Virus record (IMG/VR): IMGVR_UViG_3300046536_000256
Coordinates: 62,001 to 126,000 of that record
Strand: one strand, 5' to 3'
DNA: 64,000 bases
The notes beneath the pieces were generated by a model. That model was not told the DNA's origin, did no database searches, and saw nothing but the letters and a program-made list of their open reading frames with translations. Shown here one piece after another: positions 1,733-47,583 of this stretch (position 1 is the stretch's first letter; the number at the start of each line of letters is the position of its first letter). The position numbers and the translations under genes were made by a program.

Positions 1733-1746
1733 AAGATAGACCTTAA

Positions 1747-1780
1747 TACTACTCCTCTAGCCTAGGCTAGAGGAGTAGTA
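1747..1780. terminator. Perfect 34-bp palindrome between convergent genes (bidirectional terminator)
   Basis: tactactcctctagcct|aggctagaggagtagta, followed on + by cgtttatgtttg. Confidence 0.85.
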
Positions 1781-1793
1781 CGTTTATGTTTGG

Positions 1794-2534
1794 TTAGTTG
1801 TCATCCCAAGGATCAGACTGAATAATCCAGCCCGGGTATTGGCGGTCGATCTCTTTCATTTGCTCAGAGAACGACAACAGATATTCCCGATCCACATGCG
1901 GGATATGGTCGATCATGTTTTCTGGGTGGCCGATGACCAGCATGAGGTTCTTCCCGGACATCATCCCAGGGTTCTCATGCGCTCTACCCACCAGTTGCTG
2001 ATGGATAAGCCAATAGATGTGGTGTGCATCGTCCACATCCATTGGCCAAGTGCTGTGGTGGGTCAGGTAATTAAGGACAGCCCCGATGCCAGCCAACGCA
2101 CCATGGACAGGTTCGTTAACATCGGGTGGAAGGAAACGCTCAAGCGAGACAGTGATACAACCAATACGACGCTCGTCCCCACGCGCTTTATAGGTTTCCC
2201 AAGTTCCGCGGAGGAAGTCTTTAGGGAAACGGTATTCTTCGTAACCTTTAATAAAGTCACGACCAGGTTTATCGGGATTACCCTTAACCTCTTTGCGTAC
2301 CTGTGATGCCAGTTCCAGTTGCTGCTTACGCGATAAAACAATCTCGCCCTCCTCGTTAACTTCAGCAGCCTGAACCACTGGCTGCAACAACCGTTCCCTT
2401 ACTATTTCCATCAGTTGCTTAAGGGTTGGCAGGGAGCGTTCTTTAAAAGCAGGCGGGATGTTGGAGATCTGTGCGAATGTCATGCACCCCAAGAGTTCAG
2501 CTAACTCTTCATTGCTAAGTGGTTTCTCGTTCAT
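1794..2534 (-). CDS. Hypothetical protein; N-terminal helical module shared with two neighbours
   Basis: 246-aa ORF with an AAGGA SD; no recognisable family. Confidence 0.8.
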   Translation of the reverse strand: MNEKPLSNEELAELLGCMTFAQISNIPPAFKERSLPTLKQLMEIVRERLLQPVVQAAEVNEEGEIVLSRKQQLELASQVRKEVKGNPDKPGRDFIKGYEEYRFPKDFLRGTWETYKARGDERRIGCITVSLERFLPPDVNEPVHGALAGIGAVLNYLTHHSTWPMDVDDAHHIYWLIHQQLVGRAHENPGMMSGKNLMLVIGHPENMIDHIPHVDREYLLSFSEQMKEIDRQYPGWIIQSDPWDDN

Positions 2535-2602
2535 CTTTCAAATCCTTGTGTAGAAGACAGTGGAAACCGCGGGGCTAAACAACACCCCACGGAGTACAGT
2601 GT

Positions 2603-4390
2603 TTACCAGGTGGTGGCCGATCCACTGATCGGTGCTAACCAGAAACGATCGGGGATCAGTTCTTCGTTAGACAGGTCAGTGTAAATGATCCAACCTTTGA
2701 TTGCTGAATCAGGGAACGCAACTTGCAAGCCTTCAGGCATCGCCGCCACGAGACCGTAAGCGAAGTTCAGCACGGTGAACTCAGACGAGCTGATTGGTTT
2801 GCTGGCCAGTGCGGCTTTAACCTCGTCAGAGATCGTTTGATGTCCATTACGGGTAAACCTCAGTTCAGAGATACTGGTGATCAAGGTGTCGAAAGTATCT
2901 TCGATTGTGTCTGACACCTGGAACTTGAACGTTTGCAGCGGGTACTTCAAACTACCCAAGGTCTCGATCAAACCCGGGTATTGAACCCACTCGGCGCCTT
3001 CCGGGTATTCGAGCCGTTGGAGAAGGTTACCAATGCTAGTGCAGTTGTAAACGACCGAACCCTTTGTGTCTAGGTTAGTCGTGTGCTGGGCCACGTTCCC
3101 TGTATACGTGTCGATTGCCATACCCACAAACCGTTCATTACGCGGCAGTCCCAGAGGGGTTAGGTCATAACCACCAACTTTGCTCCCAGCGATTACTGCG
3201 TGGTAACGATTGTTGACATTTGTCATAGCACCCATGAAAGGACTGAACGGGAATTCAGCGTGCCCGAAACTGTTGTACCGCTCGTTGGCATAGTTCCCCG
3301 GCCCCGCTGGCATGCTGAACTCAGGGTTCTTCTGCCACGCACCCATGTGATCTTTAACGTATCGCGGACCAGCCAAACGTTCTTTCACCAACTCTAACAG
3401 TTCCAAACCAGCAGGGTTGTTAGCCCCACGCATCTGCGCCGGCATTGGGCGGATCTGAGTGAGTGAGTAGAGTTCCAGAAGACCCACGATGTCGTTATTG
3501 GTAACACGCCCGTACGGGTCCATCGGACCACCGGGCATCATGAACATGCGGTTAGGGCTGAAGCTGTTGAATGGGTTGAGTGGTGGGTTGGAGTTATTGA
3601 ACATCCCATATGGGTGCGGGGTTGGTTTGACCATGCTGTCAGTTACCCCGGCAACGAATCCATTGGATCCCAGTTCAATGGTGTAACGGTCGACACAGGT
3701 GAATTCCCAGCCTGGATGACCGATCTCTTTCCTTTCCCAGAGCTTGGCGGTGACAGTGTACCGATCAATGAGCTGGGTCAGCAGAGGCATGGACGGAACC
3801 ATCGTGTTAATGACGGCGGTTGCATCCAATTCGTCGATGAAGAAACCGGTGTTGACCAAGTGAGTTTTCAGGAAGTTCAGGTCAATTCCCTGTGGGGTCA
3901 TGAACTCGTTCAAAGTAACGGTCATGGTCAAAGGTTTCTGTGGTTGAGTTTGCATGGTGTCAGTACCCTTCTTTGGTGTAAGGTTAGAAATGAACAGTTG
4001 GGTTCGTTTGGTTTTGTTTCTGGTGCCTTTTACGCAGTATTCCAGGTGGTAATCGATCAGCTTCATTTTCGAGCCGAGTACCAAAGTTACTTGGTTTTTC
4101 TGCAACCCGCCAATGTCGCAAAGCAGCCCCGGTAGTCGCTCACTGAGATCTTGTCGAACTAGCTTGCGGCCGGTCTCACCCACCGGCCAGAGACCGTCGC
4201 GGTCGCAACCGTCCAGAACCTTACACAGGCTCTCCATGAACGAGTTGGGCGCTTGCGCCATCAGACTATTCAGATCGATCTGAATGAAGTCGTCTTTTAC
4301 AGTCAAGCTTGCGTGTCCAGTAGAACCTTTCCCCAAACCAATGAACAGGTCGAAAAATCTTCTACCAACTGATTGCCGTTGGTTCTCCAT
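2603..4390 (-). CDS. Hypothetical protein with a central M/N/P/F-rich low-complexity region; possible internal start at 3955
   Basis: Long ORF; the best start is ATG 4390, preceded by AAGGGGG. Confidence 0.75.
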   Translation of the reverse strand: MENQRQSVGRRFFDLFIGLGKGSTGHASLTVKDDFIQIDLNSLMAQAPNSFMESLCKVLDGCDRDGLWPVGETGRKLVRQDLSERLPGLLCDIGGLQKNQVTLVLGSKMKLIDYHLEYCVKGTRNKTKRTQLFISNLTPKKGTDTMQTQPQKPLTMTVTLNEFMTPQGIDLNFLKTHLVNTGFFIDELDATAVINTMVPSMPLLTQLIDRYTVTAKLWERKEIGHPGWEFTCVDRYTIELGSNGFVAGVTDSMVKPTPHPYGMFNNSNPPLNPFNSFSPNRMFMMPGGPMDPYGRVTNNDIVGLLELYSLTQIRPMPAQMRGANNPAGLELLELVKERLAGPRYVKDHMGAWQKNPEFSMPAGPGNYANERYNSFGHAEFPFSPFMGAMTNVNNRYHAVIAGSKVGGYDLTPLGLPRNERFVGMAIDTYTGNVAQHTTNLDTKGSVVYNCTSIGNLLQRLEYPEGAEWVQYPGLIETLGSLKYPLQTFKFQVSDTIEDTFDTLITSISELRFTRNGHQTISDEVKAALASKPISSSEFTVLNFAYGLVAAMPEGLQVAFPDSAIKGWIIYTDLSNEELIPDRFWLAPISGSATTW

Positions 4391-4478
4391 GTTGATCCCC
4401 CTTAGATTTCGATAGTGACGCCGTCGGTTGGTTTGACCACGTTTGCCATTAATAAAGTCCATCGATGTAGAAAAGAAA

Positions 4479-4528
4479 AACCCTCTAACTCTATTAGTGC
4501 TTGGGTGAGAAAATAGAGTTAGAGGGTT
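4479..4528 (-). terminator. 17-bp stem / 16-nt loop hairpin with a U-rich tail on the minus strand
   Basis: aaccctctaactctatt ... aatagagttagagggtt, preceded on + by aaaagaaa. Confidence 0.7.
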
Positions 4529-4532
4529 GATG

Positions 4533-5285
4533 TTAGAGAGCGTTTCTTACTTCCTGCGGGACCGCACCCGGTTCGTACCGATTCCGAACGTTGCCATCCA
4601 TATCGCAAACGTATATCCCCAGTGCTGCTGGGTTGCTCAGCGTATGGAAAGCATGGTAGATCGTCTTGGTATCGAAGTTAACGGTTACGTCGGTAAAGAC
4701 TTCTTGCGAGGTCCAGACAGGGAACAAGTTGTAAGCCACCGGGATGATCTCAGGGTCACGTGAGATGAACGTGATCGGGAATGCGTAATACTGGTGCCCG
4801 GTGATGTAGTGGCGGACCAATACCCCTTTGGTTTCAGGATGCGGAATGTCAACCAGAACACGCCAGCAGTTGAACTCCAGTTCTTGCTGGAGTTCAATGT
4901 ATACCTGAGCCTTCGAATAGCTTTCCGACCGGATGTGGGCTTCAAGCTGCCGGAGGATGTTGCCGTACACGTTGTCGCGTTGAACAGCCCCGCCTTCAGC
5001 TGCGTACACCATGTCCTTCACCATGTTCCTGACGTGGTCGTAGGGACTACTCTCGGCGTCTACAATTTTGGTGAGATCGATACCCCTTCTTACGGTATTG
5101 CTCTGTCGGGCCCCTGTGACTTTTTCCTCGCCTTCTTTCAGGGTAAGACGACGGGCTACAGCTGCGAGCAACTTAACCGTATCGGCCGTCATTGGCGCGT
5201 AGGTTACCAGGTTGTGGATTTCCTGGGACAGTTGTTCATTGTCCATCAGGCGGTAACGGTTACCGCGCGATTCAGTGATTGCCAT
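4533..5285 (-). CDS. Hypothetical protein
   Basis: 250-aa ORF with an AAGGG SD. Confidence 0.8.
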   Translation of the reverse strand: MAITESRGNRYRLMDNEQLSQEIHNLVTYAPMTADTVKLLAAVARRLTLKEGEEKVTGARQSNTVRRGIDLTKIVDAESSPYDHVRNMVKDMVYAAEGGAVQRDNVYGNILRQLEAHIRSESYSKAQVYIELQQELEFNCWRVLVDIPHPETKGVLVRHYITGHQYYAFPITFISRDPEIIPVAYNLFPVWTSQEVFTDVTVNFDTKTIYHAFHTLSNPAALGIYVCDMDGNVRNRYEPGAVPQEVRNAL

Positions 5286-5314
5286 GTTAGGTTACCCTTG
5301 TTTGAAATGAGACA

Positions 5315-5345
5315 AAAATAAAGGGGCGCGCAACGCCCCCCTTTT
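5315..5345 (-). terminator. Intrinsic terminator
   Basis: GC-rich hairpin ggggcg...cgcccc flanked by A and T runs. Confidence 0.7.
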
Positions 5346-5358
5346 ACCGCGTCGACCA

Positions 5359-5730
5359 TTACTGGCCGGCGAGGTTGCACAGTGAGTCAGTGATCGCAGC
5401 ACCCAGGCTAGCAACACTAACGCCGAAGCTTGCAGCGGTGATGCCGGTCAGAACTTTGGTGGTGGTGTTGATATTGCTGATAGGACCCATTACGGTACCC
5501 AGTGCATAACCACCCAGTGCGCCGATAGCCGCGCCAACCAGTGCTGCACCTTTAGAGCTACCGCCAGACAGTGCACAAACACCACCCAGGATACCACCGG
5601 CAACACCAGCGATTTCAGATACAGCCAGACCTTCGTTACGGATACCAGTGATAGCGGTGCGGTCGCGCAGGCCCAGTTCTTCTTTAACGGAAGCAGCGTC
5701 AGCAGCAAAAGAGGAAGAGAAAGAAGTCAT
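5359..5730 (-). CDS. Small glycine-zipper membrane protein, probably early
   Basis: GxxxG repeats (GVAGGILGGVCAL..., GAALVGAAIGALGGYALG); has its own early-type promoter and terminator. Confidence 0.75.
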   Translation of the reverse strand: MTSFSSSFAADAASVKEELGLRDRTAITGIRNEGLAVSEIAGVAGGILGGVCALSGGSSKGAALVGAAIGALGGYALGTVMGPISNINTTTKVLTGITAASFGVSVASLGAAITDSLCNLAGQ

Positions 5731-5786
5731 TGATCAAGTCCTTGTATAACGGGATAGGAAAGTTATTTGTGTTACTTATGTACCCT

Positions 5787-5806
5787 AGTTATATAGACCT
5801 GAAAAA
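5787..5806 (-). promoter_or_regulatory. Early (virion-RNAP)-type promoter
   Basis: Minus strand TTTTTCAGGTCTATATAACT resembles the phiKZ early consensus (T-run ... TATATTAC); related motifs occur at 11349 and 61463. Confidence 0.65.
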
Positions 5807-5824
5807 GAATATAAGTTAAATTTA

Positions 5825-6052
5825 TTACATGTAGAAGTGGGGGAAAGAAATCCAGTCGTAATAGCTGAGTACCGCCACAGTGACTATGCCGCCAACCGCC
5901 ATCAACAGAACTATATTAAACGCCATCCAGAGGAACTCACCCGTCCGCTCAAGGAACGAACGACGATCAGGTTGGTGAATACCGTAGGCAACACCGTCTT
6001 CGTAGTGGATGCGCCTTAGTTCTTTATCCAGTGCTTCTGCTTGTGGTGACAT
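5825..6052 (-). CDS. Small single-pass membrane protein
   Basis: Start MSPQAEA with a GAGG SD; hydrophobic segment FLWMAFNIVLLMAVGGIVTVAVLSYY. Confidence 0.7.
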   Translation of the reverse strand: MSPQAEALDKELRRIHYEDGVAYGIHQPDRRSFLERTGEFLWMAFNIVLLMAVGGIVTVAVLSYYDWISFPHFYM

Positions 6053-6106
6053 ATGGGGTGCCTCTAAATAAAGGGTGTTGTGTTGAAAAGAAAGGTCAAG
6101 CAAACA

Positions 6107-6137
6107 TAACTCAGGGGCTTTGGTGGCCCCTGAGTTA
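6107..6137 (-). terminator. Hairpin terminator with TATG tail
   Basis: taactcaggggc...gcccctgagtta; minus-strand tail TATGTTTGC. Confidence 0.75.
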
Positions 6138-6148
6138 ATGTCCGTTAC

Positions 6149-8491
6149 TTAGTCGAGCGCGAGGAGTACCAGCGGTTGCTTACGAGATACGTGACGAAGA
6201 GTCGCCATGTTCTTGTCAACGGCCGAGTAGCTCCACAGCCACAGATTGTCGCTGGTAGTGAAACACACCAGTTTATCAATGGTGTCAAACGAAGCTTCTT
6301 CGCCCATGGTCGGATCGAAAGCTTTCTCGATCAGATCGAAGTATTCCGGGAAGGTGCTGCGTTTCAATTGAATCGGTAGGTTTGTATCGGTGTAGATCGG
6401 GCCGCCACGGTTGTTAATGAACGTGATGTACAGTGGGCGTTCCAGAATCAATTCCTGCGCGTACTTGATCTGCTCGATAGCCGACAGTTCTGCTGCATCC
6501 GGTTTGGATGGATGAGCGTACGTGAAGATTTTCAGTTCTTCGAGCAGGTAGTGTTCTTGATCATTCGAGTTCAGGATGCGGAACATCACGGAGTCGGTTC
6601 GCTCCAAGATACCATCCAGTTCCTCGTAGTCCTTCACAATGCTGTCCACCGAAAGGTAGTGAGCTTCGTGAGGGTAACTGTCGTAACCAGCACAGTTAAT
6701 GAAGTAGTTATTGATTGCCGTTGTCAGTCGACTGTCAATGAACGACATCAGTTCTTTGTCGATGATGTTCTGACGGAAGTACGCCAGGGTTGCTTTCATC
6801 GCGGTGTAGAAGTTAGGACGCGTTGTCATCTCGCTGTCTTTAAACAGGAATGGCAGGTCCTGGAACAAACGGACTTTGTCTTCCGGTTTCGCGCACGCAA
6901 ACGTATCCCACACTTTGGTGTTGAAGCTCACCGCGTTGACTTTGGTGAAGTTCTGGCTTACACGCTGGTTGACATTGATCAGGGTCGATTCCAACTCTTT
7001 CGAGCTGGCAGCCAAGATCTGGTCTTTCAGGGTGATAACCGGGATTTTGTCTTTCTCCTCCAGCGTTTGGCAAGTCTCAATAGAGATTGTCAGTGCTGCG
7101 TCGCCTTTCAAGCCGGCAACATCTTCAACCGCAGAAGTTTCAACGGTCAAGAAATCTCCGCCATCATCGGACAGACGTGGTAGGAGTTTATGCGGGTCAC
7201 TCAAAACGGTAGGCATATCGTAGCCCTCGCAACGGACGATTCGACTGAACCATCCCGAGTCCGCATCAAGATCGATAATCACGATCCGGAAGCAGCCCTC
7301 TAGGACGGTTTCCTCTTTCTTCATTTCTGGGTGTTTAACAAACGCGTGCTTAATATTCTTCCAGTCGGTCTCGGTAACCAAGTAATGATTTGGTTTACCG
7401 ATGTTGTAGAAGAATCTGCTGAGCTGGAACTCTCCTTTGTTTTTGGGTGTAAGGTTGTTAAGGTCGTTACGGATTTTGTTCCAGTTGTGATCTGCGGCAA
7501 TGCTCGCTTCGACTGGGTCGTGACGGTCATTGTGCTGAACGTTCCCATGGTAATCACGGGCGTTCTTCTGAACGATGGAGAACAGATCACGGGCATCGCC
7601 GAAATCGGCCTGTCCGTGCATCGCCAGACCTTGGTTGCCGTACAGATACTCGGCACCCGATTCATAGCGGTTGTTCGTCAAGTCAGACCGAACAGCGGCT
7701 TTGATTTCCCACTTGATCCCAGCATACGGGTTGTTGATCCCGAACACCGCACACGCCGAGCTGATCACGTCGCTGTAGTTTTCCAGGTTTGGCATTTTGA
7801 TGGCCAAGTCCTTAGGCAACTGGCGAGCGTGGACGTTACCTTCCGGCGTCTTCATCAACCAGTTAACCATCTCCATAAAGAGGATGGAACGGATTGCGAC
7901 TTCAGCCGCACTCAGGTACTGGTTGGAGTTCAGCTCTTCCCGACCGGTCTCCTGACGGATATTGATCAAGCGCCAGCCGAACAACGGAGCTGCTGCAATC
8001 GCCACCGGGCGGTTAAATTCCTGGTGGCGAGAGAACATGGTGATAAACGCATCACGCACTGGACAAGGATGACCTTGCTCATTACGACGGAAACTCTCCA
8101 CCGTTTGTCGGTATACCTCATAAAACTTACCCGACCGCGAGATGAGGTGCTGCATGAAGATTACGTTGATCTGCACCACCTGGGAAGCGTGGTACTGCAT
8201 CGAGTCCTGATCAGGGCCTGAGGAATTTAGAATCTCCTGCATGCCCTGATCGAATACGCCACCCGAACCGTACGATTCCCATTTGATACCACCACCCATC
8301 GCAGCGGTACCGCCATCGACCATCTGACGAAACATCGCCATTGGGTCCATGGGTTGCCCCAGCATGGGGGTTGCACCTAACATGCCTGTGCGAGCACCAG
8401 CAATAGGAAGTTGACCCTGCAAGTTTGGGACTGATACACCGACTCCTCCACCTGGACGAATCATACCGCTTTGACCATTGTTCTGTTGCAT
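6149..8491 (-). CDS. Large hypothetical protein downstream of the nvRNAP beta gene; M/G/Q-rich N-terminus
   Basis: 780-aa ORF in an operon with the RNAP subunit. Confidence 0.75.
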   Translation of the reverse strand: MQQNNGQSGMIRPGGGVGVSVPNLQGQLPIAGARTGMLGATPMLGQPMDPMAMFRQMVDGGTAAMGGGIKWESYGSGGVFDQGMQEILNSSGPDQDSMQYHASQVVQINVIFMQHLISRSGKFYEVYRQTVESFRRNEQGHPCPVRDAFITMFSRHQEFNRPVAIAAAPLFGWRLINIRQETGREELNSNQYLSAAEVAIRSILFMEMVNWLMKTPEGNVHARQLPKDLAIKMPNLENYSDVISSACAVFGINNPYAGIKWEIKAAVRSDLTNNRYESGAEYLYGNQGLAMHGQADFGDARDLFSIVQKNARDYHGNVQHNDRHDPVEASIAADHNWNKIRNDLNNLTPKNKGEFQLSRFFYNIGKPNHYLVTETDWKNIKHAFVKHPEMKKEETVLEGCFRIVIIDLDADSGWFSRIVRCEGYDMPTVLSDPHKLLPRLSDDGGDFLTVETSAVEDVAGLKGDAALTISIETCQTLEEKDKIPVITLKDQILAASSKELESTLINVNQRVSQNFTKVNAVSFNTKVWDTFACAKPEDKVRLFQDLPFLFKDSEMTTRPNFYTAMKATLAYFRQNIIDKELMSFIDSRLTTAINNYFINCAGYDSYPHEAHYLSVDSIVKDYEELDGILERTDSVMFRILNSNDQEHYLLEELKIFTYAHPSKPDAAELSAIEQIKYAQELILERPLYITFINNRGGPIYTDTNLPIQLKRSTFPEYFDLIEKAFDPTMGEEASFDTIDKLVCFTTSDNLWLWSYSAVDKNMATLRHVSRKQPLVLLALD

Positions 8492-11348: not shown

Positions 11349-11367
11349 AATAATGTAGGTCTGAAAG
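11349..11367 (-). promoter_or_regulatory. Early-type promoter for the nvRNAP beta operon
   Basis: Minus strand CTTTCAGACCTACATTATT, about 40 nt upstream of 11307. Confidence 0.65.
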
Positions 11368-11539: not shown

Positions 11540-13723
11540 TTAGGCGTTTGGGTCGGTGTCCGGTACGTTAGCACCGGCGTTGCCGATATTGTCAACAACA
11601 ACGCGCTGAGAAGCCAGCTTCGACAGCAGACCTTCGTCACCCAGGAAGTCATGGGCGTCGGTGATGGTCAGCGAGCCGATGATTGGGTTCAGAGCCCAGT
11701 GCTTGTAGATCGGGAGGGTCATGACCACACCGAAGTCCTGCTGGTCACGAGTGACGTTGCCTTGGACCAGGATGTTTTCCTTGGACACGTTCACGCCGAT
11801 ACCGCCCAGAGGGTTGATGGTGTCGTTGGTGGAGGTGTTCTTCGGAACGATCAGGATTTGACCGATCTGCGAGTCGAAGTTGGTTTCGACTACGTTCAGG
11901 CTTTGCTTCGGACCAGTGGTACGAGCGTCGCCGGAGCGCATTACGAAACGGCTGAGGTTCTGGTGAACAACAACGGTCCACTCGATGTTGCCGTCAGTGC
12001 CGCCGTATTCAGCGATCGCAGCCAGACCCGACTTGGTGTTCAGGGCAGCAGTGATGTCGCTGATTTCGTTGGTGATGGCTGCGCAGACAGCGTCGAAGAC
12101 ACCCGAGGAGTCGATCGACGAAACTACGTCCTTCAGAGTGATCGCACGGTTAACTGCGGACGCAGTAACGAAGTGCTGACCGGCCAAGGTGTTGGAACCT
12201 TGGTTGTTGCCCACGACTGGGGAACCGTCGATGGAGGTGATGTACTTCAGGTGATCTTGAGCCTTGTCGAACGCGTTACGCGAGCACTGGTTGTTGATCA
12301 CGATGGACATCTGCTGGATTGCGAAGTCCAGGGAAGCCTGGTTGACGTCGTCCTTGCTGATCGGGTATTTCACCGACACTGGGGAGCGGCGCTGTACCGA
12401 CAGATGCTTGCGGGCATCGAACACTTCGATGCGATAGCCGAAGTTGCCACGGCTGGTGTTGGAAACGTTGAAGGTAGGCTTCATCGCCACAACGGTGCCG
12501 AGGCTGAACGAACGGATCAGCGCTTTCTGAGTGTCATCAGCTTTGCCGATGGTGATCAGGCTGCCAGTGGTCAGGTCGCGCAGAGCGTGAACTTCGGCAG
12601 TACCGGCGTTCAGGCGCAGTTCGTTGCCTTGACGCTGGTAGTTACCAGAAGCCGAGACGTTCAACATTGGCTCGTAGCCAGCGGTTTTGAAGCTAGCGAA
12701 AATGGTTTCGCCGACTTTCACGCCGTCTTTGTCTTCAACCGAGAAGCCTGGCAGAATGCGCAGGTGCATGTTGAGCATGCGATCGTCGGACGATTGACCG
12801 TTGGCGGTTGGGCCGAAGGTGTTGTTCGACATCGACTTGGTGTCGATGAAGAAGGTAACGGCGTTGGCGCCGATTTTGCCACCCAGAGCCATGGTGCGGA
12901 TGCTGATGGAGTTCGATTCGATTTCGTCGGTCGAAGTCCAAGGGCGCTGGCCAGGAACTTGGGTCAGACCCAGAAGGTTCGGTACGGTAACCGGAACAGT
13001 CAGGAACTGAGTTTTGTGAGCGCTACGGCCGTAGGCGTCGCCTTCGGAGTAGGTGGCGTTGGTTGGAGCAACCAGGCCGGCATCAGCGAACAGGGAACGA
13101 GTGTCGTCACCAGCGTCAGCTGGGTACACTGGCCACAGAGCCAGCACTTCGTCTTTGAACATTTCGCCGGAACGCAGCAGACCGAAGATCGGACGCAGCT
13201 CGGAAGCCGACTGCCATGCACTGTTGCCGTAGGCATAAGTGCCCAGACCAGCGGCACGTACGACCATTTCAGCGCCTTCATCTTCGTACTTGACGGAGAT
13301 GGTGGTGAAAAGTGCCTCAGCCGCAGGCGTTTGCAGGTGAGACTGGGCGTTGAGGGTCATGTTCGCAGCTTTCAGGTCAGCCTGATCGCCTTTGAAGTTT
13401 TGCATCGAGAAGCCTTCCAGACCTTGGATAGACTTCAGGCCAGCTTCGGCCTCGCCGAACAGGGACAGCGCTTCGCCTGGAACGCCGCTACGGCCTTTGG
13501 CGCCCATGAAAGCGTCGTACGCGCCGGGAGTCAGGACTTTCAGGCTCTTGCCGAGGGTGGCGCCTTCAGTGCCAGCAACCCCCATCATTTGCGATTGGAA
13601 AGTGTCGAAGCTCTCGTTACCCGAGAAGGTAGCCAGCGCGTTGTTGTTCACCAGCGATTCGCGGATAGCGTGGAACAGGTTGTTCTCCGGCTTCAGCGCT
13701 GCCGTCAAAATTTTCTTAGCCAT
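11540..13723 (-). CDS. Major capsid protein (phiKZ gp120-like)
   Basis: 727 aa with strong codon bias; propeptide carries G-x-E sites (SGNE, AGTE, QGLE|GF); Q..AAEALF motif; lies beside gp119-like and DnaB genes. Confidence 0.9.
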   Translation of the reverse strand: MAKKILTAALKPENNLFHAIRESLVNNNALATFSGNESFDTFQSQMMGVAGTEGATLGKSLKVLTPGAYDAFMGAKGRSGVPGEALSLFGEAEAGLKSIQGLEGFSMQNFKGDQADLKAANMTLNAQSHLQTPAAEALFTTISVKYEDEGAEMVVRAAGLGTYAYGNSAWQSASELRPIFGLLRSGEMFKDEVLALWPVYPADAGDDTRSLFADAGLVAPTNATYSEGDAYGRSAHKTQFLTVPVTVPNLLGLTQVPGQRPWTSTDEIESNSISIRTMALGGKIGANAVTFFIDTKSMSNNTFGPTANGQSSDDRMLNMHLRILPGFSVEDKDGVKVGETIFASFKTAGYEPMLNVSASGNYQRQGNELRLNAGTAEVHALRDLTTGSLITIGKADDTQKALIRSFSLGTVVAMKPTFNVSNTSRGNFGYRIEVFDARKHLSVQRRSPVSVKYPISKDDVNQASLDFAIQQMSIVINNQCSRNAFDKAQDHLKYITSIDGSPVVGNNQGSNTLAGQHFVTASAVNRAITLKDVVSSIDSSGVFDAVCAAITNEISDITAALNTKSGLAAIAEYGGTDGNIEWTVVVHQNLSRFVMRSGDARTTGPKQSLNVVETNFDSQIGQILIVPKNTSTNDTINPLGGIGVNVSKENILVQGNVTRDQQDFGVVMTLPIYKHWALNPIIGSLTITDAHDFLGDEGLLSKLASQRVVVDNIGNAGANVPDTDPNA

Positions 13724-13787
13724 GGATTAAAGTCCTGTGAGTTGAACATTTGAAACAAATATATTTGTTTGCGCAAGTTGAGCTGCA

Positions 13788-15908: not shown

Positions 15909-15964
15909 TAAAACAGTAACTTTTAATATCGCCATCTATCAGTATTAAATAGACCACCTAAATA

Positions 15965-15996
15965 CCTCCTCTCCGGGTCATTCCTGGGAGGAGGTT
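15965..15996 (+). terminator. Hairpin after dnaB
   Basis: acctcctctccggg...cctgggaggaggt. Confidence 0.65.
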
Positions 15997-16203
15997 AATG
16001 GGTTATATTTGCCTGCTTCTTATTTCCACATCGCCTTATTAGCGAATGCCGGCTACAAAGGGCTACAAAGCGATTACAGCCGTTTTAAGAATACTCCCTT
16101 CTCGTATTAGGGGTTATTCTCTTTAATAGGTTTAACGTGATTGTAGGGGTTACTCTTTTCCCTTCCTGTTAATGGGTTCCCTAGGGAACAGAGCAATAAG
16201 GCA

Positions 16204-16236
16204 TATACCTCTACTCCCAAAAGGAGTAGAGGTATA
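16204..16236 (-). terminator. Hairpin terminator for the minus-strand structural operon
   Basis: tatacctctactcc caaaa ggagtagaggtata; minus-strand tail TATGCC. Confidence 0.75.
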
Positions 16237-16338
16237 GCTTACTGTCAAAAGCAAAGATAGAAGGGGATTGCCCCCACTCGCTCCCGCGTCTTTCCATTAC
16301 TGGTGTATAGACATAAGCACCCAGACAGGAAAATATAT

Positions 16339-35288: not shown

Positions 35289-36026
35289 TTACATCGTTAC
35301 TTCACGGTTGTCCGTCATGTCAACGAAGTTTTCCAGGTACGCGGCAAACAACAGCGAGAGTTCCGTGACCGCACCCAATGTACTGGAGCGCCAATCAACA
35401 TCGCCCAAACTGAGGCTGTATTTGTACGGGAAGTTTTCTTCGATAAACTTAGCGTGAGCCTTGTCCACCAAGTTTGGGATGTTCTCCAGGAACAGGTAGT
35501 CACCGTTTTCAACGCTTTCCACGGAAGGGCTAAGGTCACCCCATTGCTTTGGGTCAGGATCCAGCAACTGCGTTTTGATCTCGTACACGCCCCAATTAAC
35601 AAAGCCCATGTAACGAGACACCTGAGCTTTGAGGGTGTTGAGAGTGAACGCCGCATCCTGACACGCCAGGTTCTTCGAGTTGATGTCATCCAGGATGGCC
35701 TGAACCTTCTCGGAGATGTACACCCCGGCAGCCTCAAAGTACTTCTGGGCTTGTTCCGTAGCGATGGTATCGCTGATGCGCTTGTCGAGACCTTTGTTCA
35801 GGATGACCTGACCGTTCTCTTTCGGGAAGCTGTCGAACAGTCGGAGTTTGATTTCCGACGCTTCGCGCACAGGCCAGAAACGGTTAGCGACTTCACAAGC
35901 TTCCTTGTAAGAGACGCCTTCCTGGAGCTGTTTAACCAGATCCTTCATCGCAGCGGTGGAGTTGGTCATCTCGGCGTGCGCCGCGTTACGCAGCTCAACG
36001 AGTTGAGTCAAGCAAATGTCGGTCAT
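35289..36026 (-). CDS. Hypothetical, probable virion protein
   Basis: 245-aa ORF coupled to an upstream head-protein gene. Confidence 0.65.
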   Translation of the reverse strand: MTDICLTQLVELRNAAHAEMTNSTAAMKDLVKQLQEGVSYKEACEVANRFWPVREASEIKLRLFDSFPKENGQVILNKGLDKRISDTIATEQAQKYFEAAGVYISEKVQAILDDINSKNLACQDAAFTLNTLKAQVSRYMGFVNWGVYEIKTQLLDPDPKQWGDLSPSVESVENGDYLFLENIPNLVDKAHAKFIEENFPYKYSLSLGDVDWRSSTLGAVTELSLLFAAYLENFVDMTDNREVTM

Positions 36027-37552
36027 ACCATTTTCCCCCAGCCAGTTTGTTTGGAGAAGTTATTCAGCGTGGTTTTAACACCACCGAAGTCGTTCTTGAT
36101 GATGGTCTCAACGACCGCGGCATTCTTCTCGCCGAAGGTCTTTGCGTCCGCTTCTTTGATGAACACCATGTCGCGAGCGTAGGCGTAACCTTCCGAGTCA
36201 CCGAAACCAGCATGACCTTTAGCCCGTGCCTGCATCACCAGGTTCGCCGCTGTCTCTACTTCGCCCAACAGGCCGTTGTAGTAGTAGGCGTGCGCGCGGT
36301 TGTACCAGTCCGCCAAGTTAGATGCCTGGCGTTCAACGATCAACAGCGATTGCGAGATGCTGTAACAGAACTGAGAGAAGTTCCGTACGTCCGCGGCCAT
36401 CACCTGATACATCTGAGCCAACGCCGGGTAATTGTAGAAGCCAGCAATCTCATTGATCTTGTCGGCCTCACCCTTGTCGATTACCGAAGCCAAGTCCTTA
36501 AAGTTGATCTTGGACAGGTCAGCGGTGTTCTCGGTGATTTCAATGTACCGCGTGTTGAGCGCCTGGATGCTGTGCAGGATAGTCGAGACATCCTGTTTTC
36601 TCACCTTAACCATCTCGGTGACCACAGTCTCCTGGATCTTCTTGCGGCAATTGCTGAAGCCGCTCTGAAGCTCGTCGTTGCTGAACTTGATGTTGTACAG
36701 TGTTTCATACAACTTGCTGACCAAGCTGGCCACAACGTCGACATCAAGGCCCAGCACCACTTCGTTAATCTCCTTGGTCAGGCGGTTAACTTCAGGGGAC
36801 ATACTCACCGAGGTCTGCAACGCAGGGTTACCGGCACGCACACGGGTCTTGGTGTATTCCTTGCTAATCAATGCCTTAAGCGATTGATTGTTCTTGGCCA
36901 CCTTGTCCGTGATCTGACCCAGCTTAGCCATCGCCTGTTGCAGCAGTGGCATGGCTTCGATCAGACTGTCAATGGCGCCTTGGTCCGTTTCGAACTTGCT
37001 CTTCAGCAGGGTCAGCTGCGCGATCCGGTCCTGGTTAGGCGGCAGGTTCATCAGGAAGTTTTCGAGGTTGTATTCACTGGCGGGGAAACCCAGGCCACTG
37101 AGTACAGTAACGAACTCTTGCTTCAGTTTACCCAGGTCGTCGTTGATCGCCTTGTTGATACGGGCGCTCTTACGGAAACCAAAGATCCCTTTCACCGTGT
37201 CGACCACCCAGTCCACCGCCATGCGGATGTACTTGATGATGTTCTCGATAAAAGCCTTGAAGCCATCCTTAATAGCGCTGAAGAAACCTTCCTGACCAGC
37301 ACGGGCATTACGCTCAGACGGGAACGGGTCGTAGTTCTCGTGGTTTGCCAGTTTGAAGTGAGCCGCTACACGCTTGGAGAACTTACCCAGTTGCATGCTT
37401 TCAATGCCGCTGACCATGACGGTTGCATCGTCTTGCTGGGTTTCTTTGTAGTACTCGGTCAAATCAACGCGTTGTTTGCTGGTGCCCGGCTCATACGAAT
37501 CGTCCGGGTGACCAGTGGCGATCTGTTTGTATGTGTCCAGGTAATCACTCAT
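36023..37552 (-). CDS. Internal head protein (long helical/coiled coil)
   Basis: Start MSDYLD; SGIE and AGQE sites followed by GFFSAIKDGFKAFIENIIKYI. Confidence 0.7.
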   Translation of the reverse strand: MSDYLDTYKQIATGHPDDSYEPGTSKQRVDLTEYYKETQQDDATVMVSGIESMQLGKFSKRVAAHFKLANHENYDPFPSERNARAGQEGFFSAIKDGFKAFIENIIKYIRMAVDWVVDTVKGIFGFRKSARINKAINDDLGKLKQEFVTVLSGLGFPASEYNLENFLMNLPPNQDRIAQLTLLKSKFETDQGAIDSLIEAMPLLQQAMAKLGQITDKVAKNNQSLKALISKEYTKTRVRAGNPALQTSVSMSPEVNRLTKEINEVVLGLDVDVVASLVSKLYETLYNIKFSNDELQSGFSNCRKKIQETVVTEMVKVRKQDVSTILHSIQALNTRYIEITENTADLSKINFKDLASVIDKGEADKINEIAGFYNYPALAQMYQVMAADVRNFSQFCYSISQSLLIVERQASNLADWYNRAHAYYYNGLLGEVETAANLVMQARAKGHAGFGDSEGYAYARDMVFIKEADAKTFGEKNAAVVETIIKNDFGGVKTTLNNFSKQTGWGKMV

Positions 37553-37958
37553 GGCGGCCCACCAGTTCGGCCAGCAGGAATTCAACCAGCACGCTGAACT
37601 CTTCGTTCTGAGTGATGTCCACGCCTTCGGTACCCTCGACCACGACCACAGTGGTGAAAGGTTCAGGCAGACGGCCCTTGGTGATCAGTGCAGCACGCAG
37701 GGAGGCCATGCGGTACTTGACGGTTTCGAAAACAAACGGACCGTTGATCGGCGAGATTTTGTTCCAGCGGTCCAGTTGTTCCCAGACAGCTTGTTCTTCG
37801 TCAATGCTCAGGCCGATGCTCGAGCTGAACTTGAAGTGCTTGCGGATGATGGCGGTGGCGTAAGGTTCCAGAGCAAACTTCGCCAGTTGTTCAGGGCAGG
37901 TGATCCCCAAGCTGATCAGTTTGTTCTTGTAGTCGGCAACATGCGGCAAATGAGACAT
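37545..37958 (-). CDS. Small hypothetical/virion protein
   Basis: Start MSHLPH with an AGGAG SD. Confidence 0.65.
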   Translation of the reverse strand: MSHLPHVADYKNKLISLGITCPEQLAKFALEPYATAIIRKHFKFSSSIGLSIDEEQAVWEQLDRWNKISPINGPFVFETVKYRMASLRAALITKGRLPEPFTTVVVVEGTEGVDITQNEEFSVLVEFLLAELVGRHE

Positions 37959-45371: not shown

Positions 45372-45896
45372 TTACAGTTTCCCCATCCCTGCCTTTCTTG
45401 CCAACTCCAGAATTTCCTTCTCCTCTTTAGAGAGTCCAGCTTCCGGAGGTGTTGCATCGGCATCGGCTTTGGAACGTTGTGCTTCGCCCTCACTGATCGC
45501 CAGCACCAAGTCGTCCACTAAGAAAGCTGGTAGGTTCAGGTAGTCATGAAGGGGAATCACATCTTTCAACTTAGCCCGTCCGTAGTACTTACCAATGGCA
45601 TTAATCGACCACGGGTGTACAAACTCATTCTCCTTTTTAATGAAGGCAACTGAAGAATGCGGGTTAAGCTGAGATCGGTCGTAATACCCCATGTTGAAGT
45701 CATGCAGTATCCCCTCTTGGAAGTCCAACGACTCTGGTCGGTCCAGGTGTGTCGGAAGTCCAAGAAGGTTGTTGTTTACTACATGAAACTCATCGCTGAA
45801 GTGTCTCTCGAAATCTATTCCGAGATGGCTTCTTTGGTCGCGGCTGCCGCTTCGGCCGCTTGAGTCATCAGCTTCAACTGGGTAAGGGTAAAAAAA
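45372..45896 (-). CDS. Tail/baseplate assembly chaperone 'T'-like segment, probably reached by -1 frameshift from 45815..47557
   Basis: The frame is open from the T7 run at 45896-45890 to the stop at 45372; the annotated TTG start has no clear SD; contains YLNLPAFLVDDL. Confidence 0.7.
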   Translation of the reverse strand, partial: FFYPYPVEADDSSGRSGSRDQRSHLGIDFERHFSDEFHVVNNNLLGLPTHLDRPESLDFQEGILHDFNMGYYDRSQLNPHSSVAFIKKENEFVHPWSINAIGKYYGRAKLKDVIPLHDYLNLPAFLVDDLVLAISEGEAQRSKADADATPPEAGLSKEEKEILELARKAGMGKL

Positions 45897-47557
45897 GCCA
45901 TGAACGGGTCGATCGGGGTGTAGCCAAAACGACGGTCAGGGTCCTGGAACTCTTCGGTCCGCTTCTTGCACACCGGGCAGTGGTAGTTAGCCACAGCAAC
46001 GAAGGTGTGCGCCATCTGCGGCGATTTGTTCAGGATGAAGGCAGAGAGGGTCTTGTTCAGCTCACGGCTATCCAAGATCACGTCCATACAACCCTTGTTG
46101 AATTCGGACGCTTCACATTCCGAACGCTTCAACACCAGGTCTTCTTCGTCAGTACCCGGCGCGCCCACCGACACGTAGGTCTTGATCCAGTGCAGGAACT
46201 CAGTCGCACCCAGGGTAGTCAACAGCAGAGCGACCTGAGTCTTGAACTCTTTCTCGTCGATAACCTTGGAGCGAATTTCCTGGAGCTGTGGGTTGATACG
46301 ACCGGCGTAGTAGTCGTAGGTTTCGAACGCTTCAGCCATCGACGAAGGACCGACTTCGAAGTAGATCGACTTGTCAACGTTGTAGACCCGATTGCTTTCC
46401 AGGCCGTAGGTCGACTTCTCGATCATTTCCAGCGTCTGCTCAACGGTGTACTTCGCATTACCGTTGTACAGGTTGGCGTAGATCGCCGACTCTTCCGGAG
46501 TTTCGATGCTGTGACGCACACGCACCAGCTTGTCCGGATCACTGACCTGGAAGTCAGACCAGTCGCACTTGTCGTTCAGGCAACGCAGCTGGAGGTTGAC
46601 CCCGTGACTGTGGGTCGAGCGCAGCAGTGCCATGCAGATGGTGCCGAAGTCGCTGAACCGCACAACCTGAGACAGGTCCTTGAAGTCAACGATACCAGTG
46701 ACCGAACTGTTGACGATACGTGCCGCCAAGAAGTCCCAGACCACACGCATGCCAGCCATGACCGACAGAGTGACACTGTTACCGCCCACGGTACGCACGT
46801 AGCCTTTAACGGTACGGTTGATGTCGTTGACCAGCGCTGCCAGTTCCAGCTTGCTTGGACGGGTGAAGGTCAGCATGCAGTACGAATCACGCAGCAACAC
46901 GTCGAACTGGAATTCACCGTTCTCAGCACGCATCGAAGAACGACGCATTACTTCAGAAACAGAGAACCCTTTCGACGCACGACTTGGCTTCTTGCCCAGG
47001 ATGTCCGTGGTAACAATGTTGCTGCCACGGTCACTGACGTTGGAGATACCGTCTTCGTTCATGACCTTGGAACGGATCTTGATGCTGTCGACGTACTCTT
47101 CCATGAAACGGTAGAGGTCGCCGCAGATCTGCTCCATTTCTTCAGCAGTCTTGTCGGCGTGGCTCGCTTCCAAGTACTGAGCCCATTCGTTCTTGGTCGA
47201 CGCCAGCATGCCATCCGACGCTTGGCCTTGTTCGTGCAACGACTTCATTGCAGTCGTTTGCAGCCACTTGGACAGCAGGATGTTGGCACGCTCGTTGCAG
47301 TCACGAGAGTTACCCAAGAAGATCGGAAGGTAGCCGAGTTGTTTGTCCTCTTCAGTACCAGGACGAATCAACTCAGAGACCGAAGGCAGGATCTTCTTCA
47401 TCGGGGTGTTTTCAGCGGTGTGGGTTTCGCCGAAGCTGGCTTCTGCCACCGGAGCGGCTGGGGCCACTGGGACCACCGGCACTGGGGAGGCTTCAGCTGG
47501 ATCTTCCGCAACCCCGGCTTGCGTGGTGTTCGCCGGGTTGTTCTCTTGTTCACTCAT
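45815..47557 (-). CDS. Tail/baseplate hub assembly protein (T4 gp26-like chaperone)
   Basis: D...I..ALLRS...G......C....C and CPVC motifs; C-terminal ...DPFMAFF lies on a slippery run. Confidence 0.55.
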   Translation of the reverse strand: MSEQENNPANTTQAGVAEDPAEASPVPVVPVAPAAPVAEASFGETHTAENTPMKKILPSVSELIRPGTEEDKQLGYLPIFLGNSRDCNERANILLSKWLQTTAMKSLHEQGQASDGMLASTKNEWAQYLEASHADKTAEEMEQICGDLYRFMEEYVDSIKIRSKVMNEDGISNVSDRGSNIVTTDILGKKPSRASKGFSVSEVMRRSSMRAENGEFQFDVLLRDSYCMLTFTRPSKLELAALVNDINRTVKGYVRTVGGNSVTLSVMAGMRVVWDFLAARIVNSSVTGIVDFKDLSQVVRFSDFGTICMALLRSTHSHGVNLQLRCLNDKCDWSDFQVSDPDKLVRVRHSIETPEESAIYANLYNGNAKYTVEQTLEMIEKSTYGLESNRVYNVDKSIYFEVGPSSMAEAFETYDYYAGRINPQLQEIRSKVIDEKEFKTQVALLLTTLGATEFLHWIKTYVSVGAPGTDEEDLVLKRSECEASEFNKGCMDVILDSRELNKTLSAFILNKSPQMAHTFVAVANYHCPVCKKRTEEFQDPDRRFGYTPIDPFMAFFTLTQLKLMTQAAEAAAATKEAISE

Positions 47558-47583
47558 GTTCTAGCTTTCCTTAACAGGGGTGC

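What the first reader, a model, noticed from the sequence alone, without database searches (positions are those of the whole stretch)
2370..5250. A ~45-aa helical module shared by three adjacent accessory genes
Seen: LSNEELAELLGCMTFAQISNIPPAFKERSLPTLKQLMEIVRERLLQP (N-terminus of 1794..2534); VTNNDIVGLLELYSLTQIRPMPAQMRGANNPAGLELLELVKERLAGP (about 3505-3366, embedded between low-complexity arms); and, more weakly, MDNEQLSQEIHNLVTYAPMTADTVKLLAAVARRL (about 5246-5145). The proteins otherwise look unrelated. Inference: a shuffled oligomerisation or localisation tag linking different payloads into one complex.
Basis: partly seen in the sequence, partly recalled or inferred. Interest (0 to 1): 0.6.

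Follow-up and report, generated by a model that had tools for sequence, protein, structure and literature searches.

The report
New helical domain in jumbo-phage cassette
Two neighbouring genes of an EL-like giant phage, not three, share a real and previously undescribed helix-loop-helix domain of about 48 residues; it marks a small family of fast-changing accessory proteins encoded beside a large virion-protein gene in related phages, and it probably helps these proteins dock to each other or to a common partner, which is untested.

Summary
The window is part of a 233-kb jumbo phage distantly related to Pseudomonas phage EL. The module shared by gene A (1794-2534, -) and gene B (2603-4390/4462, -) is real. 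It gives pairwise E 1e-4. Reciprocal family-only profiles each find the other gene genome-wide (E 9e-7 and 2e-7), and profile-profile comparison gives 98.8%, E 1e-16. The third copy, the N-terminus of gene C, never reaches significance (best E 0.005). C is instead tied to B by a different beta-rich segment (82%, E 1e-5).

A profile search of 1.84 billion proteins found 27 true carriers. All come from metagenomes and none has a Pfam or PHROG match. The module sits at the N-terminus, internally between P/M/N/F/G-rich arms, at the C-terminus, or alone (74-81 aa, including EL gp72).

In three related phage genomes exactly three adjacent genes carry it, in the same variable slot. A and B also share a C-terminal 'YxGWxI' unit, so they are not otherwise unrelated.

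Function is inferred: a docking or hetero-oligomerisation domain. The complex prediction gives only weak support (0.38 against 0.00 for controls). It is a new small domain family of moderate interest.

The parts
1794..2534 (-). Gene A, 246 aa: N-terminal module, a variable linker, then a conserved alpha/beta C-terminal region
   Evidence: ORF. An ACAAGGA ribosome-binding-like site lies before the ATG. Six metagenomic homologues at 52-68% identity. No Pfam, PHROG or phage tblastn match.
2379..2525 (-). Module copy 1 (A residues 4-52): helix, Pro-rich loop, helix
   Evidence: Alignment A5. Profile tests. The AF2 model of A has helices at 8-16, 28-31 and 38-50, with pLDDT about 55-66.
1806..1949 (-). 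C-terminal beta-alpha-beta 'VIG...YPGWIIQSD' unit of A (about residues 196-243)
   Evidence: The motif recurs in groups A, B, E and F. hhalign of the B-like against the A-like C-terminal units gives 76%, E 2.3e-5 over 36 columns.
2603..4390 (-). Gene B, 595 aa from the MENQ start; the ORF stays open up to an ATG at 4462 (619 aa)
   Evidence: ORF. The gene-caller product P0007 is 595 aa. AAGGGGGA lies 6 nt before the ATG at 4390. Relatives are P0008, P0009, P0012 and 11 further B-like representatives.
3365..3511 (-). Module copy 2 (P0007 residues 294-342, which are residues 318-366 of the 619-aa ORF)
   Evidence: It is the most conserved island of the B-like proteins, with mean pairwise identity 0.51-0.55 against 0.17-0.42 elsewhere. 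Helices at 298-308 and 328-339 in the low-confidence AF2 model.
3512..3643 (-). Low-complexity arm 1 of B (P 23%, M 14%, N 14%, F 9%)
   Evidence: Composition. pLDDT is below 50 across 236-397 in the model.
3206..3364 (-). Low-complexity arm 2 of B (rich in N, G, A, P, F and M)
3008..3208 (-). Beta-rich segment of B (P0007 395-461) that is shared with gene C
   Evidence: hhalign of A3 against A4 gives 83%, E 8.5e-6. With six B-like sequences it gives 82%, E 1.1e-5 over 69 columns.
2666..2773 (-). C-terminal 'LNFxxG...EGL...GWIIYTD' unit of B; the protein ends in Trp
4533..5285 (-). Gene C, 250 aa: a conserved member of the cassette.
   Evidence: ORF. Homologues are P0011 and P0013 plus those in L020-L022. 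The module tests are negative.
4569..4772 (-). Segment of C (residues 172-239) homologous to the beta-rich segment of B
4480..4527 (-). 17-bp hairpin followed by a U-run between C and B; terminator-like
   Evidence: strand folding gives -24.6 kcal/mol, z -9.96, and 0 of 200 shuffles fold as well.
1747..1780 (.). 15-bp palindromic hairpin between the convergent ends of the large virion-protein gene and gene A; probably a two-way terminator
5320..5342 (-). Terminator-like hairpin upstream of gene C, after the 123-aa gene

Best explanation
Shown:
- A and B carry one copy each of a real, previously undescribed domain of about 48 residues. Its consensus is: aromatic-Pro/Gly, then [ST]-N-x-x-L-x-E-L-L-x-x-Y-x-L-T-Q-x-x-x-L-P, then about 8 residues, then P-x-G-x-[DE]-L-[LI]-x-L-[IV]-x-x-R-L. 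It is predicted to be a helix, a Pro-rich loop and a helix.
- It defines a small family of accessory proteins of phages related to Pseudomonas phage EL.
- The family is encoded as a cassette of adjacent genes: a C-like gene, a small module protein, a B-like gene and an A-like gene. The cassette lies in a variable slot between the conserved major-capsid / RNA-polymerase-subunit / 780-aa block and the convergently transcribed large virion-protein gene.
- This genome has only the B and A copies. The small module protein is absent, and C is linked to B by a different shared segment.

Inferred:
- The domain folds on its own and acts as a protein-protein docking element.
- It holds the cassette's proteins together, module to module, or attaches each of them to one common partner.
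- The surrounding domains diversify quickly.
For: The homology is real.

It is a family, not a pair. The profile search of 1.84e9 representatives returned 31 hits, of which 27 are true carriers covering nearly the full module. With the module masked they fall into at least four BLAST-unlinked groups plus a module-only protein.

The module behaves as an autonomous unit:
- It occurs N-terminally, internally, C-terminally (187-aa protein of L018) and alone (P0039 79 aa, P0014 74 aa, EL gp72 81 aa).
- A short variant matches the canonical one at 96.4%, E 1.1e-9.
- It lies between low-complexity arms and is the conservation peak of the B-like proteins.

The carriers form a cassette. Exactly three adjacent module ORFs occur in each of three IMG/VR relatives. 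The same order is seen in L004, L011 and L018. The slot holds 0 to 21 genes in cultured relatives.

The module has no basic character (mean net charge -0.7), which favours protein binding over nucleic-acid binding.

Complex prediction of the A-module with the B-module gave weak support: ipSAE 0.38 against a best control of 0.00 (3 controls). That mark was reached by 58/80 solved complexes and 2/110 mismatches, but passes at 0.60 or under are more often wrong than right. The runs agree in at least 88% of contacts, and the partner's pLDDT is at least 63.
Against: - There is no experimental or structural evidence of binding, and the complex score is in the weak band.
- The AF2 models are poor (A pLDDT 60, B 47), so even the fold is only a secondary-structure statement.
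- A and B also share a C-terminal unit, so part of the pattern is plain paralogy rather than a mobile tag.
- This genome has only two carriers, and phage EL has one (gp72). A hetero-oligomer of cassette proteins therefore cannot be obligatory.
- Nothing is known of expression time or location.
Confidence: 0.45

Rival explanations
1. Plain paralogy. A, B and their kin descend by tandem duplication from one ancestral protein made of the helical module plus the C-terminal 'YxGWxI' unit. The two parts pack together inside each protein. The 'module' is only the best-preserved piece and has no tag or docking role.
For: - A and B share the C-terminal unit in the same order (76%, E 2.3e-5).
- B-like and group E proteins share about 63-100 C-terminal columns (70-82%).
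- The Trp of the GW motif is nearly invariant in a forced alignment of 33 proteins.
- The genes are adjacent and co-oriented.
Against: - The module exists without any GW unit in proteins of 74-81 aa.
- It lies after, not before, a GW-containing domain in the 187-aa protein of L018.
- In B-like proteins, 40-50 residues of low-complexity sequence separate it from folded parts on both sides.
- Group D has a different body.
Confidence: 0.25
2. Head-incorporation signal. The module works like the helix-loop-helix coat-binding end of the phage P22 scaffolding protein, or like the capsid-targeting sequences of T4 internal proteins. It would bring variable cargo proteins into the prohead next to the portal or scaffold, for later ejection.
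For: - The cassette sits among head genes, downstream of the major-capsid-protein block and convergent with a phrog_3004 'head and packaging' virion protein.
- The module is a small helix-loop-helix on flexible linkers.
- The comparison with the P22 and T4 signals is from my own knowledge, not a test.
Against: - EL gp72, the only carrier in a cultured phage found here, is annotated as a hypothetical protein in the record, while neighbours are annotated as virion structural proteins.
- The [SAG]-x-E protease motif of phiKZ-type head proteins (motif recalled from my own knowledge) follows the module in only 3 of 11 A-like proteins.
- The module is not basic.
Confidence: 0.15
3. Nucleic-acid-binding motif of the SAP/HeH (helix-extension-helix) or helix-turn-helix kind. 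It would anchor the proteins to phage or host DNA.
For: - The leucine-rich helix, extended loop with conserved Gly/Pro, and second helix ending in R-L recall the SAP/HeH pattern (from my own knowledge).
- One member has a sub-threshold HTH_3 hit (E 0.069, 13.6 bits against a cut-off of 23).
- The module part of the A model aligns weakly to TetR, MarR, Myb and Tc3 DNA-binding domains (Z 2.8-3.2).
Against: - No SAP, HeH, Rho_N or LEM match in any of 11 modules, even at E up to 10.
- No PDB sequence match (best E 0.71).
- Z below 4 is noise for this aligner.
- Mean net charge is -0.7, and only 1 of 35 modules exceeds +2.
Confidence: 0.08
4. Chance resemblance of two leucine-rich helical stretches, so no real feature.
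For: Only 30% identity over 47 residues in the window itself. The profile also picks up leucine-rich-repeat proteins as false hits (P0021, P0029, P0033, P0040).
Against: The reciprocal family-only profile hits are genome-wide significant. Group-level hhalign gives E 1.2e-16. Twenty-seven full-length module hits were found in 1.84e9 proteins, and the examined ones lie in the same gene slot.
Confidence: 0.01

Closest known systems
Pseudomonas phage EL gp72 (YP_418105.1, hypothetical protein, 81 aa)
   Same: It carries a short variant of the module at its N-terminus (HLSNRQLADLLAGYHLY...GPVMLKLIRKRL). The short-variant family matches the canonical module at 96.4%, E 1.1e-9. The profile hit in the EL genome has E 2.4e-9. 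It is the only carrier found in a cultured phage.
   Different: Its loop is about 7 residues shorter. It has no A-like or B-like body. In EL it lies near the helicase gene, not in the slot next to the large virion-protein gene. This window's genome has no gp72 homologue. Its function is unknown.
SAP / HeH (helix-extension-helix) motifs
   Same: Both are small two-helix units with leucine-rich helices and a conserved Gly/Pro loop, often set between disordered linkers at either end of or inside modular proteins. This is a resemblance from my own knowledge.
   Different: The module is longer (about 44-48 residues against about 35), is not basic and has no Pfam match at any threshold tried. There is no evidence of DNA binding.
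Coat-binding helix-loop-helix of the phage P22 scaffolding protein, and capsid-targeting sequences of T4 internal proteins
   Same: Both are short helical elements that attach otherwise unrelated proteins to a common assembly, encoded among head genes (from my own knowledge).
   Different: Those act through basic residues or are cut off by the prohead protease. Here there is no basic patch and no conserved cleavage motif. No virion data exist for these proteins.
Docking domains of modular assemblies (dockerin-cohesin, polyketide-synthase docking helices)
   Same: The proposed working principle is the same: a small autonomous domain on a flexible linker brings variable catalytic or binding bodies together.
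   Different: There is no sequence or fold relation. The partner here is unknown, and module-to-module binding has only weak computational support.
Paralogous inner-body / head protein families of phiKZ-like phages
   Same: Both are lineage-specific, fast-evolving paralogue families of jumbo phages, clustered near head genes.
   Different: No sequence match to any PHROG or deposited phage protein. The processing motif is not conserved.

Membership tests
The new module family itself (operational definition: significant match to the module profile A5/A6) | Full-length profile match covering [ST]-N..L.ELL..Y.LTQ...LP...P.G..L..L[IV]..RL | tested here: met
   A scores 73.9 bits and B 78.7 bits in the genome-wide search. 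The independent reciprocal profiles give E 9.3e-7 and 1.9e-7.
   hmmsearch scores are -0.5 to 1.8 bits even with a search space of one sequence. hhalign gives 0.4-7.5%, best E 0.0047.
SAP / HeH domain | Match to the Pfam SAP, HeH, Rho_N or LEM models | tested here: not met
   The 11 module segments were scanned at E up to 10 and none of these families was listed. HMMER's filters drop many weak hits, so this is not proof of absence.
SAP / HeH domain | Basic surface for nucleic-acid binding | tested here: not met
   Net charge of 35 modules: mean -0.7, range -4 to +3.
SAP / HeH domain | Helix-extension-helix fold | tested here: inconclusive
   Two helices with a long loop are predicted in both the A and B models, but at pLDDT 35-66. 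The fold search gave Z below 4 only.
Helix-turn-helix DNA-binding domains (HTH_3, TetR-type) | Pfam match at the gathering threshold | tested here: not met
   The best hit is HTH_3 at 13.6 bits against a cut-off of 23, in 1 of 11 members.
phiKZ-type processed head / inner-body proteins | Conserved [S/A/G]-x-E prohead-protease site after an N-terminal propeptide | tested here: not met
   The motif lies within 40 residues after the module in 3 of 11 A-like proteins, and at different places.
phiKZ-type processed head / inner-body proteins | Presence in the virion | not testable with these tools
   The carriers come from metagenomes. EL gp72 is annotated only as a hypothetical protein.
Leucine-rich repeats | Tandem repeats of the LxxLxLxxN motif | tested here: not met
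   A, B and the 27 true carriers have a single module copy. The LRR proteins hit by the profile (P0021, P0029, P0033, P0040) match in 6-13 short pieces each.

The most novel reading that the evidence does not exclude
The module is a lineage-specific assembly code. The two to four adjacent cassette proteins (small module protein, B-like, A-like, perhaps C through a degenerate copy) would join through their modules into one complex on flexible P/M/N/F/G-rich tethers. That complex would be attached to a conserved phage structure such as the neighbouring large virion protein. Variable effector domains could then be swapped in and out during arms races with hosts.
Probability: 0.2. Interest if true: 0.65.

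Novelty: new member of a known kind. Interest (0 to 1): 0.4.

Why it matters
Most genes of jumbo phages have no known function, and their variable slots are thought to hold host-interaction and counter-defence genes. A domain that is shared by several otherwise dissimilar proteins of one cassette gives a handle on such genes:
- It groups about 30 orphan protein clusters into one family.
- It predicts that they act together or on one partner.
- It offers a short, well-defined piece for pull-downs, two-hybrid tests and localisation.
- Phage EL (gp72) is a cultured entry point.

If the module proves to be a docking code, it would be an example of how giant phages exchange effector domains on a fixed scaffold. 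If not, this remains one more conserved domain of unknown function.

Tried and rejected
- Pfam and PHROG scans of A, B, C and neighbours found nothing for A, B or C. Scans of 33 family members also found nothing.
- megablast and tblastn of A and B against 50,697 phage records gave no match.
- Single-protein scans of IMG/VR gave no relatives. The alignment-based scan found three. The module-only alignment was too variable for that tool.
- The PDB sequence profile search gave a best E of 0.71.
- The wide fold search with the A model gave a best Z of 3.8, which is noise.
- ESM Atlas look-ups of whole A and of its module gave no usable hit.
- AF2 of A and B with shallow alignments gave poor models (pLDDT 60 and 47).
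- C as a third module copy was rejected as unproven.
- A gp72-like gene was sought in this genome and none was found.
- The module is absent from Erwinia phage RisingSun and Shewanella phage FishSpeaker. Klebsiella phage Miami gave only a marginal hit, E 0.04.
- The EL-type promoter motif was sought near A, B and C and is not there, so nothing can be said about timing.
- No Rfam family or tRNA was found in the window.
- Paper searches found no description of the module or of EL gp72.
- Complex prediction was busy five times before it ran. Its result is weak support only.
Full report
**Setting**

The window is bases 62001-126000 of a 233,283-bp viral record with direct terminal repeats. Its 780-aa ORF (6149-8491, -) is 40% identical to gp81 of Pseudomonas phage EL and 28% identical to gp86 of Erwinia phage RisingSun. 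The surrounding order matches EL, RisingSun, Klebsiella phage Miami and Shewanella phage FishSpeaker. That order is major capsid protein, gp79-like gene, RNA-polymerase subunit, 780-aa gene, then a convergent large virion-protein gene (phrog_3004, E 2e-125).

The stretch between the 780-aa gene and the large virion-protein gene is a variable slot. It holds 0 genes in FishSpeaker, 1 in RisingSun, 4 in Miami, 21 in EL and 5 here. All five are on the minus strand:
- a 92-aa ORF (5825-6103);
- a 123-aa glycine-rich protein (5359-5730);
- C (4533-5285, 250 aa);
- B (2603-4390, 595 aa; the frame is open up to 4462);
- A (1794-2534, 246 aa).

Strong hairpins follow the 780-aa gene, the 123-aa gene, C and A.

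For A and B the answer is yes.
- BLASTP gives 30% identity over 47 ungapped residues, E 1e-4.
- The A module finds only B in the whole genome.
- A has six metagenomic homologues and B has three; a fourth B homologue was read from a syntenic contig.
- In both families the module is conserved.
- Profiles built from one family alone find the other gene as the only non-self hit among 2557 six-frame ORFs of the genome (E 9.3e-7 and 1.9e-7).
- hhalign of the full-length families aligns exactly the 48 module columns (92.6%, E 4.6e-7).
- Module against module gives 97.4%, E 1.4e-11. At group level it gives 98.8%, E 1.2e-16.

For C the answer is no.
- BLASTP finds nothing.
- HMMs of the module score C near zero bits.
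- hhalign gives at best 7.5%, E 0.0047, even with six C-like sequences.
- The weak alignments do cover the whole module in one register.
- A 188-aa protein of relative L020 links weakly to both sides: to C at 70%, E 3.9e-5, and to the short module variant at 18%, E 1.4e-3.

A degenerate copy in C is therefore possible but unproven.

**What the module is**

A profile of 11 module segments (A5) was scored against 1.84 billion representative proteins. It returned 31 hits at E up to 1e-3.
- Four are leucine-rich-repeat proteins matched in many short pieces, and are false.
- Twenty-seven match once over nearly the whole module.

With the module masked, BLASTP links the carriers (the 27 representatives plus the closer A and B homologues) into these groups:
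- a B-like group of 15;
- an A-like group of 11;
- group D with 4 members;
- group E with 3 members;
- a singleton of 438 aa;
- a 79-aa protein that is little more than the module.

A shorter-loop variant occurs in small proteins: EL gp72, P0045, P0014 and two partial ORFs. It matches the canonical module at 96.4%, E 1.1e-9. In L018 a 187-aa protein carries the module at its C-terminal end.

So the module occurs N-terminally, internally, C-terminally and alone. In B-like proteins it is the conservation peak (0.51-0.55 mean pairwise identity against 0.17-0.42 elsewhere). It lies between arms rich in Pro, Met, Asn, Phe and Gly, which the model leaves disordered.

The predicted secondary structure is the same in A (helices 8-16, 28-31 and 38-50) and in B (298-308 and 328-339), though at low confidence.

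None of 33 family members matches Pfam or PHROGs. The module matches no Pfam model even at E up to 10 and no PDB sequence. Fold and Atlas searches are at noise level.

**The cassette**

The carriers are neighbours. The table shows the module-bearing genes found next to each other.

| Source | Adjacent module-bearing genes (aa) |
|---|---|
| L004 | 74, 561, 247 |
| L018 | 187, 433, 220 |
| L011 | 342, 244 |
| IMG/VR relatives G001-G003 (58-100% complete) | exactly three adjacent module ORFs each |

In L004, L018 and the three IMG/VR relatives these genes lie in the same slot, ending against the large virion-protein gene. L011 is too short to show the flanks. A C-like gene precedes them in L004 and L020-L022.

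The window's genome has the C, B and A genes but lacks the small module protein. It also has no gp72 homologue. EL has only gp72, and RisingSun and FishSpeaker have none.

**Other links among the three genes**

The proteins are not otherwise unrelated.
- A and B share a C-terminal beta-alpha-beta unit ending in Y-x-G-W-x-I (76%, E 2.3e-5). The same unit links the B-like group and group E (70-82%).
- B and C share a beta-rich segment of about 68 residues (82-83%, E about 1e-5).

The three genes are thus a mosaic built from a small set of lineage-specific pieces.

**How it most likely works**

Shown: there is a conserved, separable helix-loop-helix domain. It is carried once per protein, by two to three adjacent, co-oriented genes, in a conserved cassette.

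Inferred: it is a docking domain that joins these proteins to each other or to one partner.

In favour:
- It exists as a stand-alone protein.
- It is placed on flexible arms.
- Its charge is neutral to acidic (mean -0.7).
- Several single-copy carriers occur together in each genome.
- The complex prediction gave a weak pass. The A-module with the B-module scored ipSAE 0.38 against a best of 0.00 in three controls. That mark was reached by 58 of 80 solved complexes and 2 of 110 mismatches, but passes at 0.60 or under are more often wrong than right. The runs agree in at least 88% of contacts, and the partner's pLDDT is at least 63.

Against:
- There is no experiment and no confident structure.
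- Genomes with one or two carriers exist.
- Part of the pattern is plain paralogy.

I put the docking reading at about 0.45. The rivals are:
- an intramolecular remnant of paralogy, 0.25;
- a head-incorporation signal, which is a special case of docking, 0.15;
- nucleic-acid binding, 0.08;
- chance, 0.01.

**Comparison with known things**

The nearest named protein is EL gp72, which is uncharacterised. The layout recalls SAP/HeH motifs, scaffolding-protein helix-loop-helix ends and docking domains. These are resemblances from my own knowledge, not tests. The membership tests that could be run (Pfam match, basic charge, protease motif) were not met.

**Novelty and verdict**

The module is an undescribed small domain family restricted to relatives of phage EL, almost all from metagenomes. 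Domain sharing among phage accessory genes is a known kind of thing, so I rate it a new member of a known kind, with interest 0.4. Its interpretation is partly supported.

**Limits**

Noticed in passing
window 3008-3208 (B) and 4569-4772 (C), both on the - strand: B and C share a beta-rich segment of about 68 residues (...Y-[DN]-x-x-P-P...V-[DN]-x-x-T...G-x-Y-x-C-x-x-x-G-N...R-x-E). hhalign gives 82-83%, E about 1e-5.
   Followed up: yes
window 2603-2611 (last codons of B), and the relatives P0008-P0043: All 15 B-like proteins, and the 187-aa module protein of L018, end in an aromatic residue (W, F or Y), often as ...P-R-x-W or ...T-T-W. This might be a conserved C-terminal docking tip. It is unexplained.
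   Followed up: partly
window 1733-6148, compared with L003, L015, L016 and L017: The slot between the 780-aa gene and the convergent large virion-protein gene holds 0 genes (FishSpeaker), 1 (RisingSun), 4 (Miami), 5 (here) and 21 (EL). It is a hot spot of gene turnover in this phage group.
   Followed up: yes
window 4480-4527 (-): A 17-bp perfect hairpin with a 16-nt loop and a U-run lies between C and B (-24.6 kcal/mol, z -10). The consensus terminator scan missed it because of the long loop. Similar hairpins follow the 780-aa gene (6107-6137), the 123-aa gene (5320-5342) and A (1747-1780).
   Followed up: partly
window 15909-16338: A 430-nt stretch has no ORF over 43 aa. It lies between the DnaB-like helicase gene and the gp71-like gene, where phage EL has four small genes (gp72-gp75), including the module-bearing gp72. 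No Rfam family or tRNA was found there.
   Followed up: partly
window 11350-11360 (-): ACCTACATTAT matches the core of the two promoters annotated in phage EL (TATTTTAAACCTA[CG]ATTAT). It sits at the same place as in EL, between the major capsid gene and the gp79-like gene. No such motif lies near A, B or C.
   Followed up: partly
window 5359-5730 (-): A 123-aa glycine-rich protein (GGILGGVCALSGG..., glycine-zipper-like, probably membrane-embedded) is conserved at this position in L004, L018 and L020-L022. RisingSun gp87 has the same size and place but is not significantly similar (E 0.14).
   Followed up: partly
window 11540-13753, 36023-37597, 45815-47587, 47584-48453: Very long ORFs lie on the strand opposite to real genes, for example 700 aa opposite the 727-aa major capsid gene. 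These genes contain no TTA, CTA or TCA codons at all, which leaves the codon-aligned antisense frame free of stops. The antisense ORFs are shadows, not genes. A and B do use a few such codons, so their codon bias is weaker.
   Followed up: yes
window 3955 (internal ATG of B): Short B-like relatives (P0008, P0009, P0017) begin at the position of the internal Met (MQTQPQ...) of B, which is preceded by AAGAAGGG. Other relatives (P0016, P0018, P0022, P0025) have the N-terminal domain of about 145 residues. Domain gain and loss, or an internal start, is possible.
   Followed up: partly
L018 3677-4240, and B residues about 151-235 of P0007: A second 'GW' motif (HPGWEF in B, YEGWYF in the 187-aa protein of L018) lies before the module. 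The N-terminal half of B therefore resembles the small C-terminal-module proteins, and its C-terminal half resembles A. B may be a fusion of the two types.
   Followed up: no
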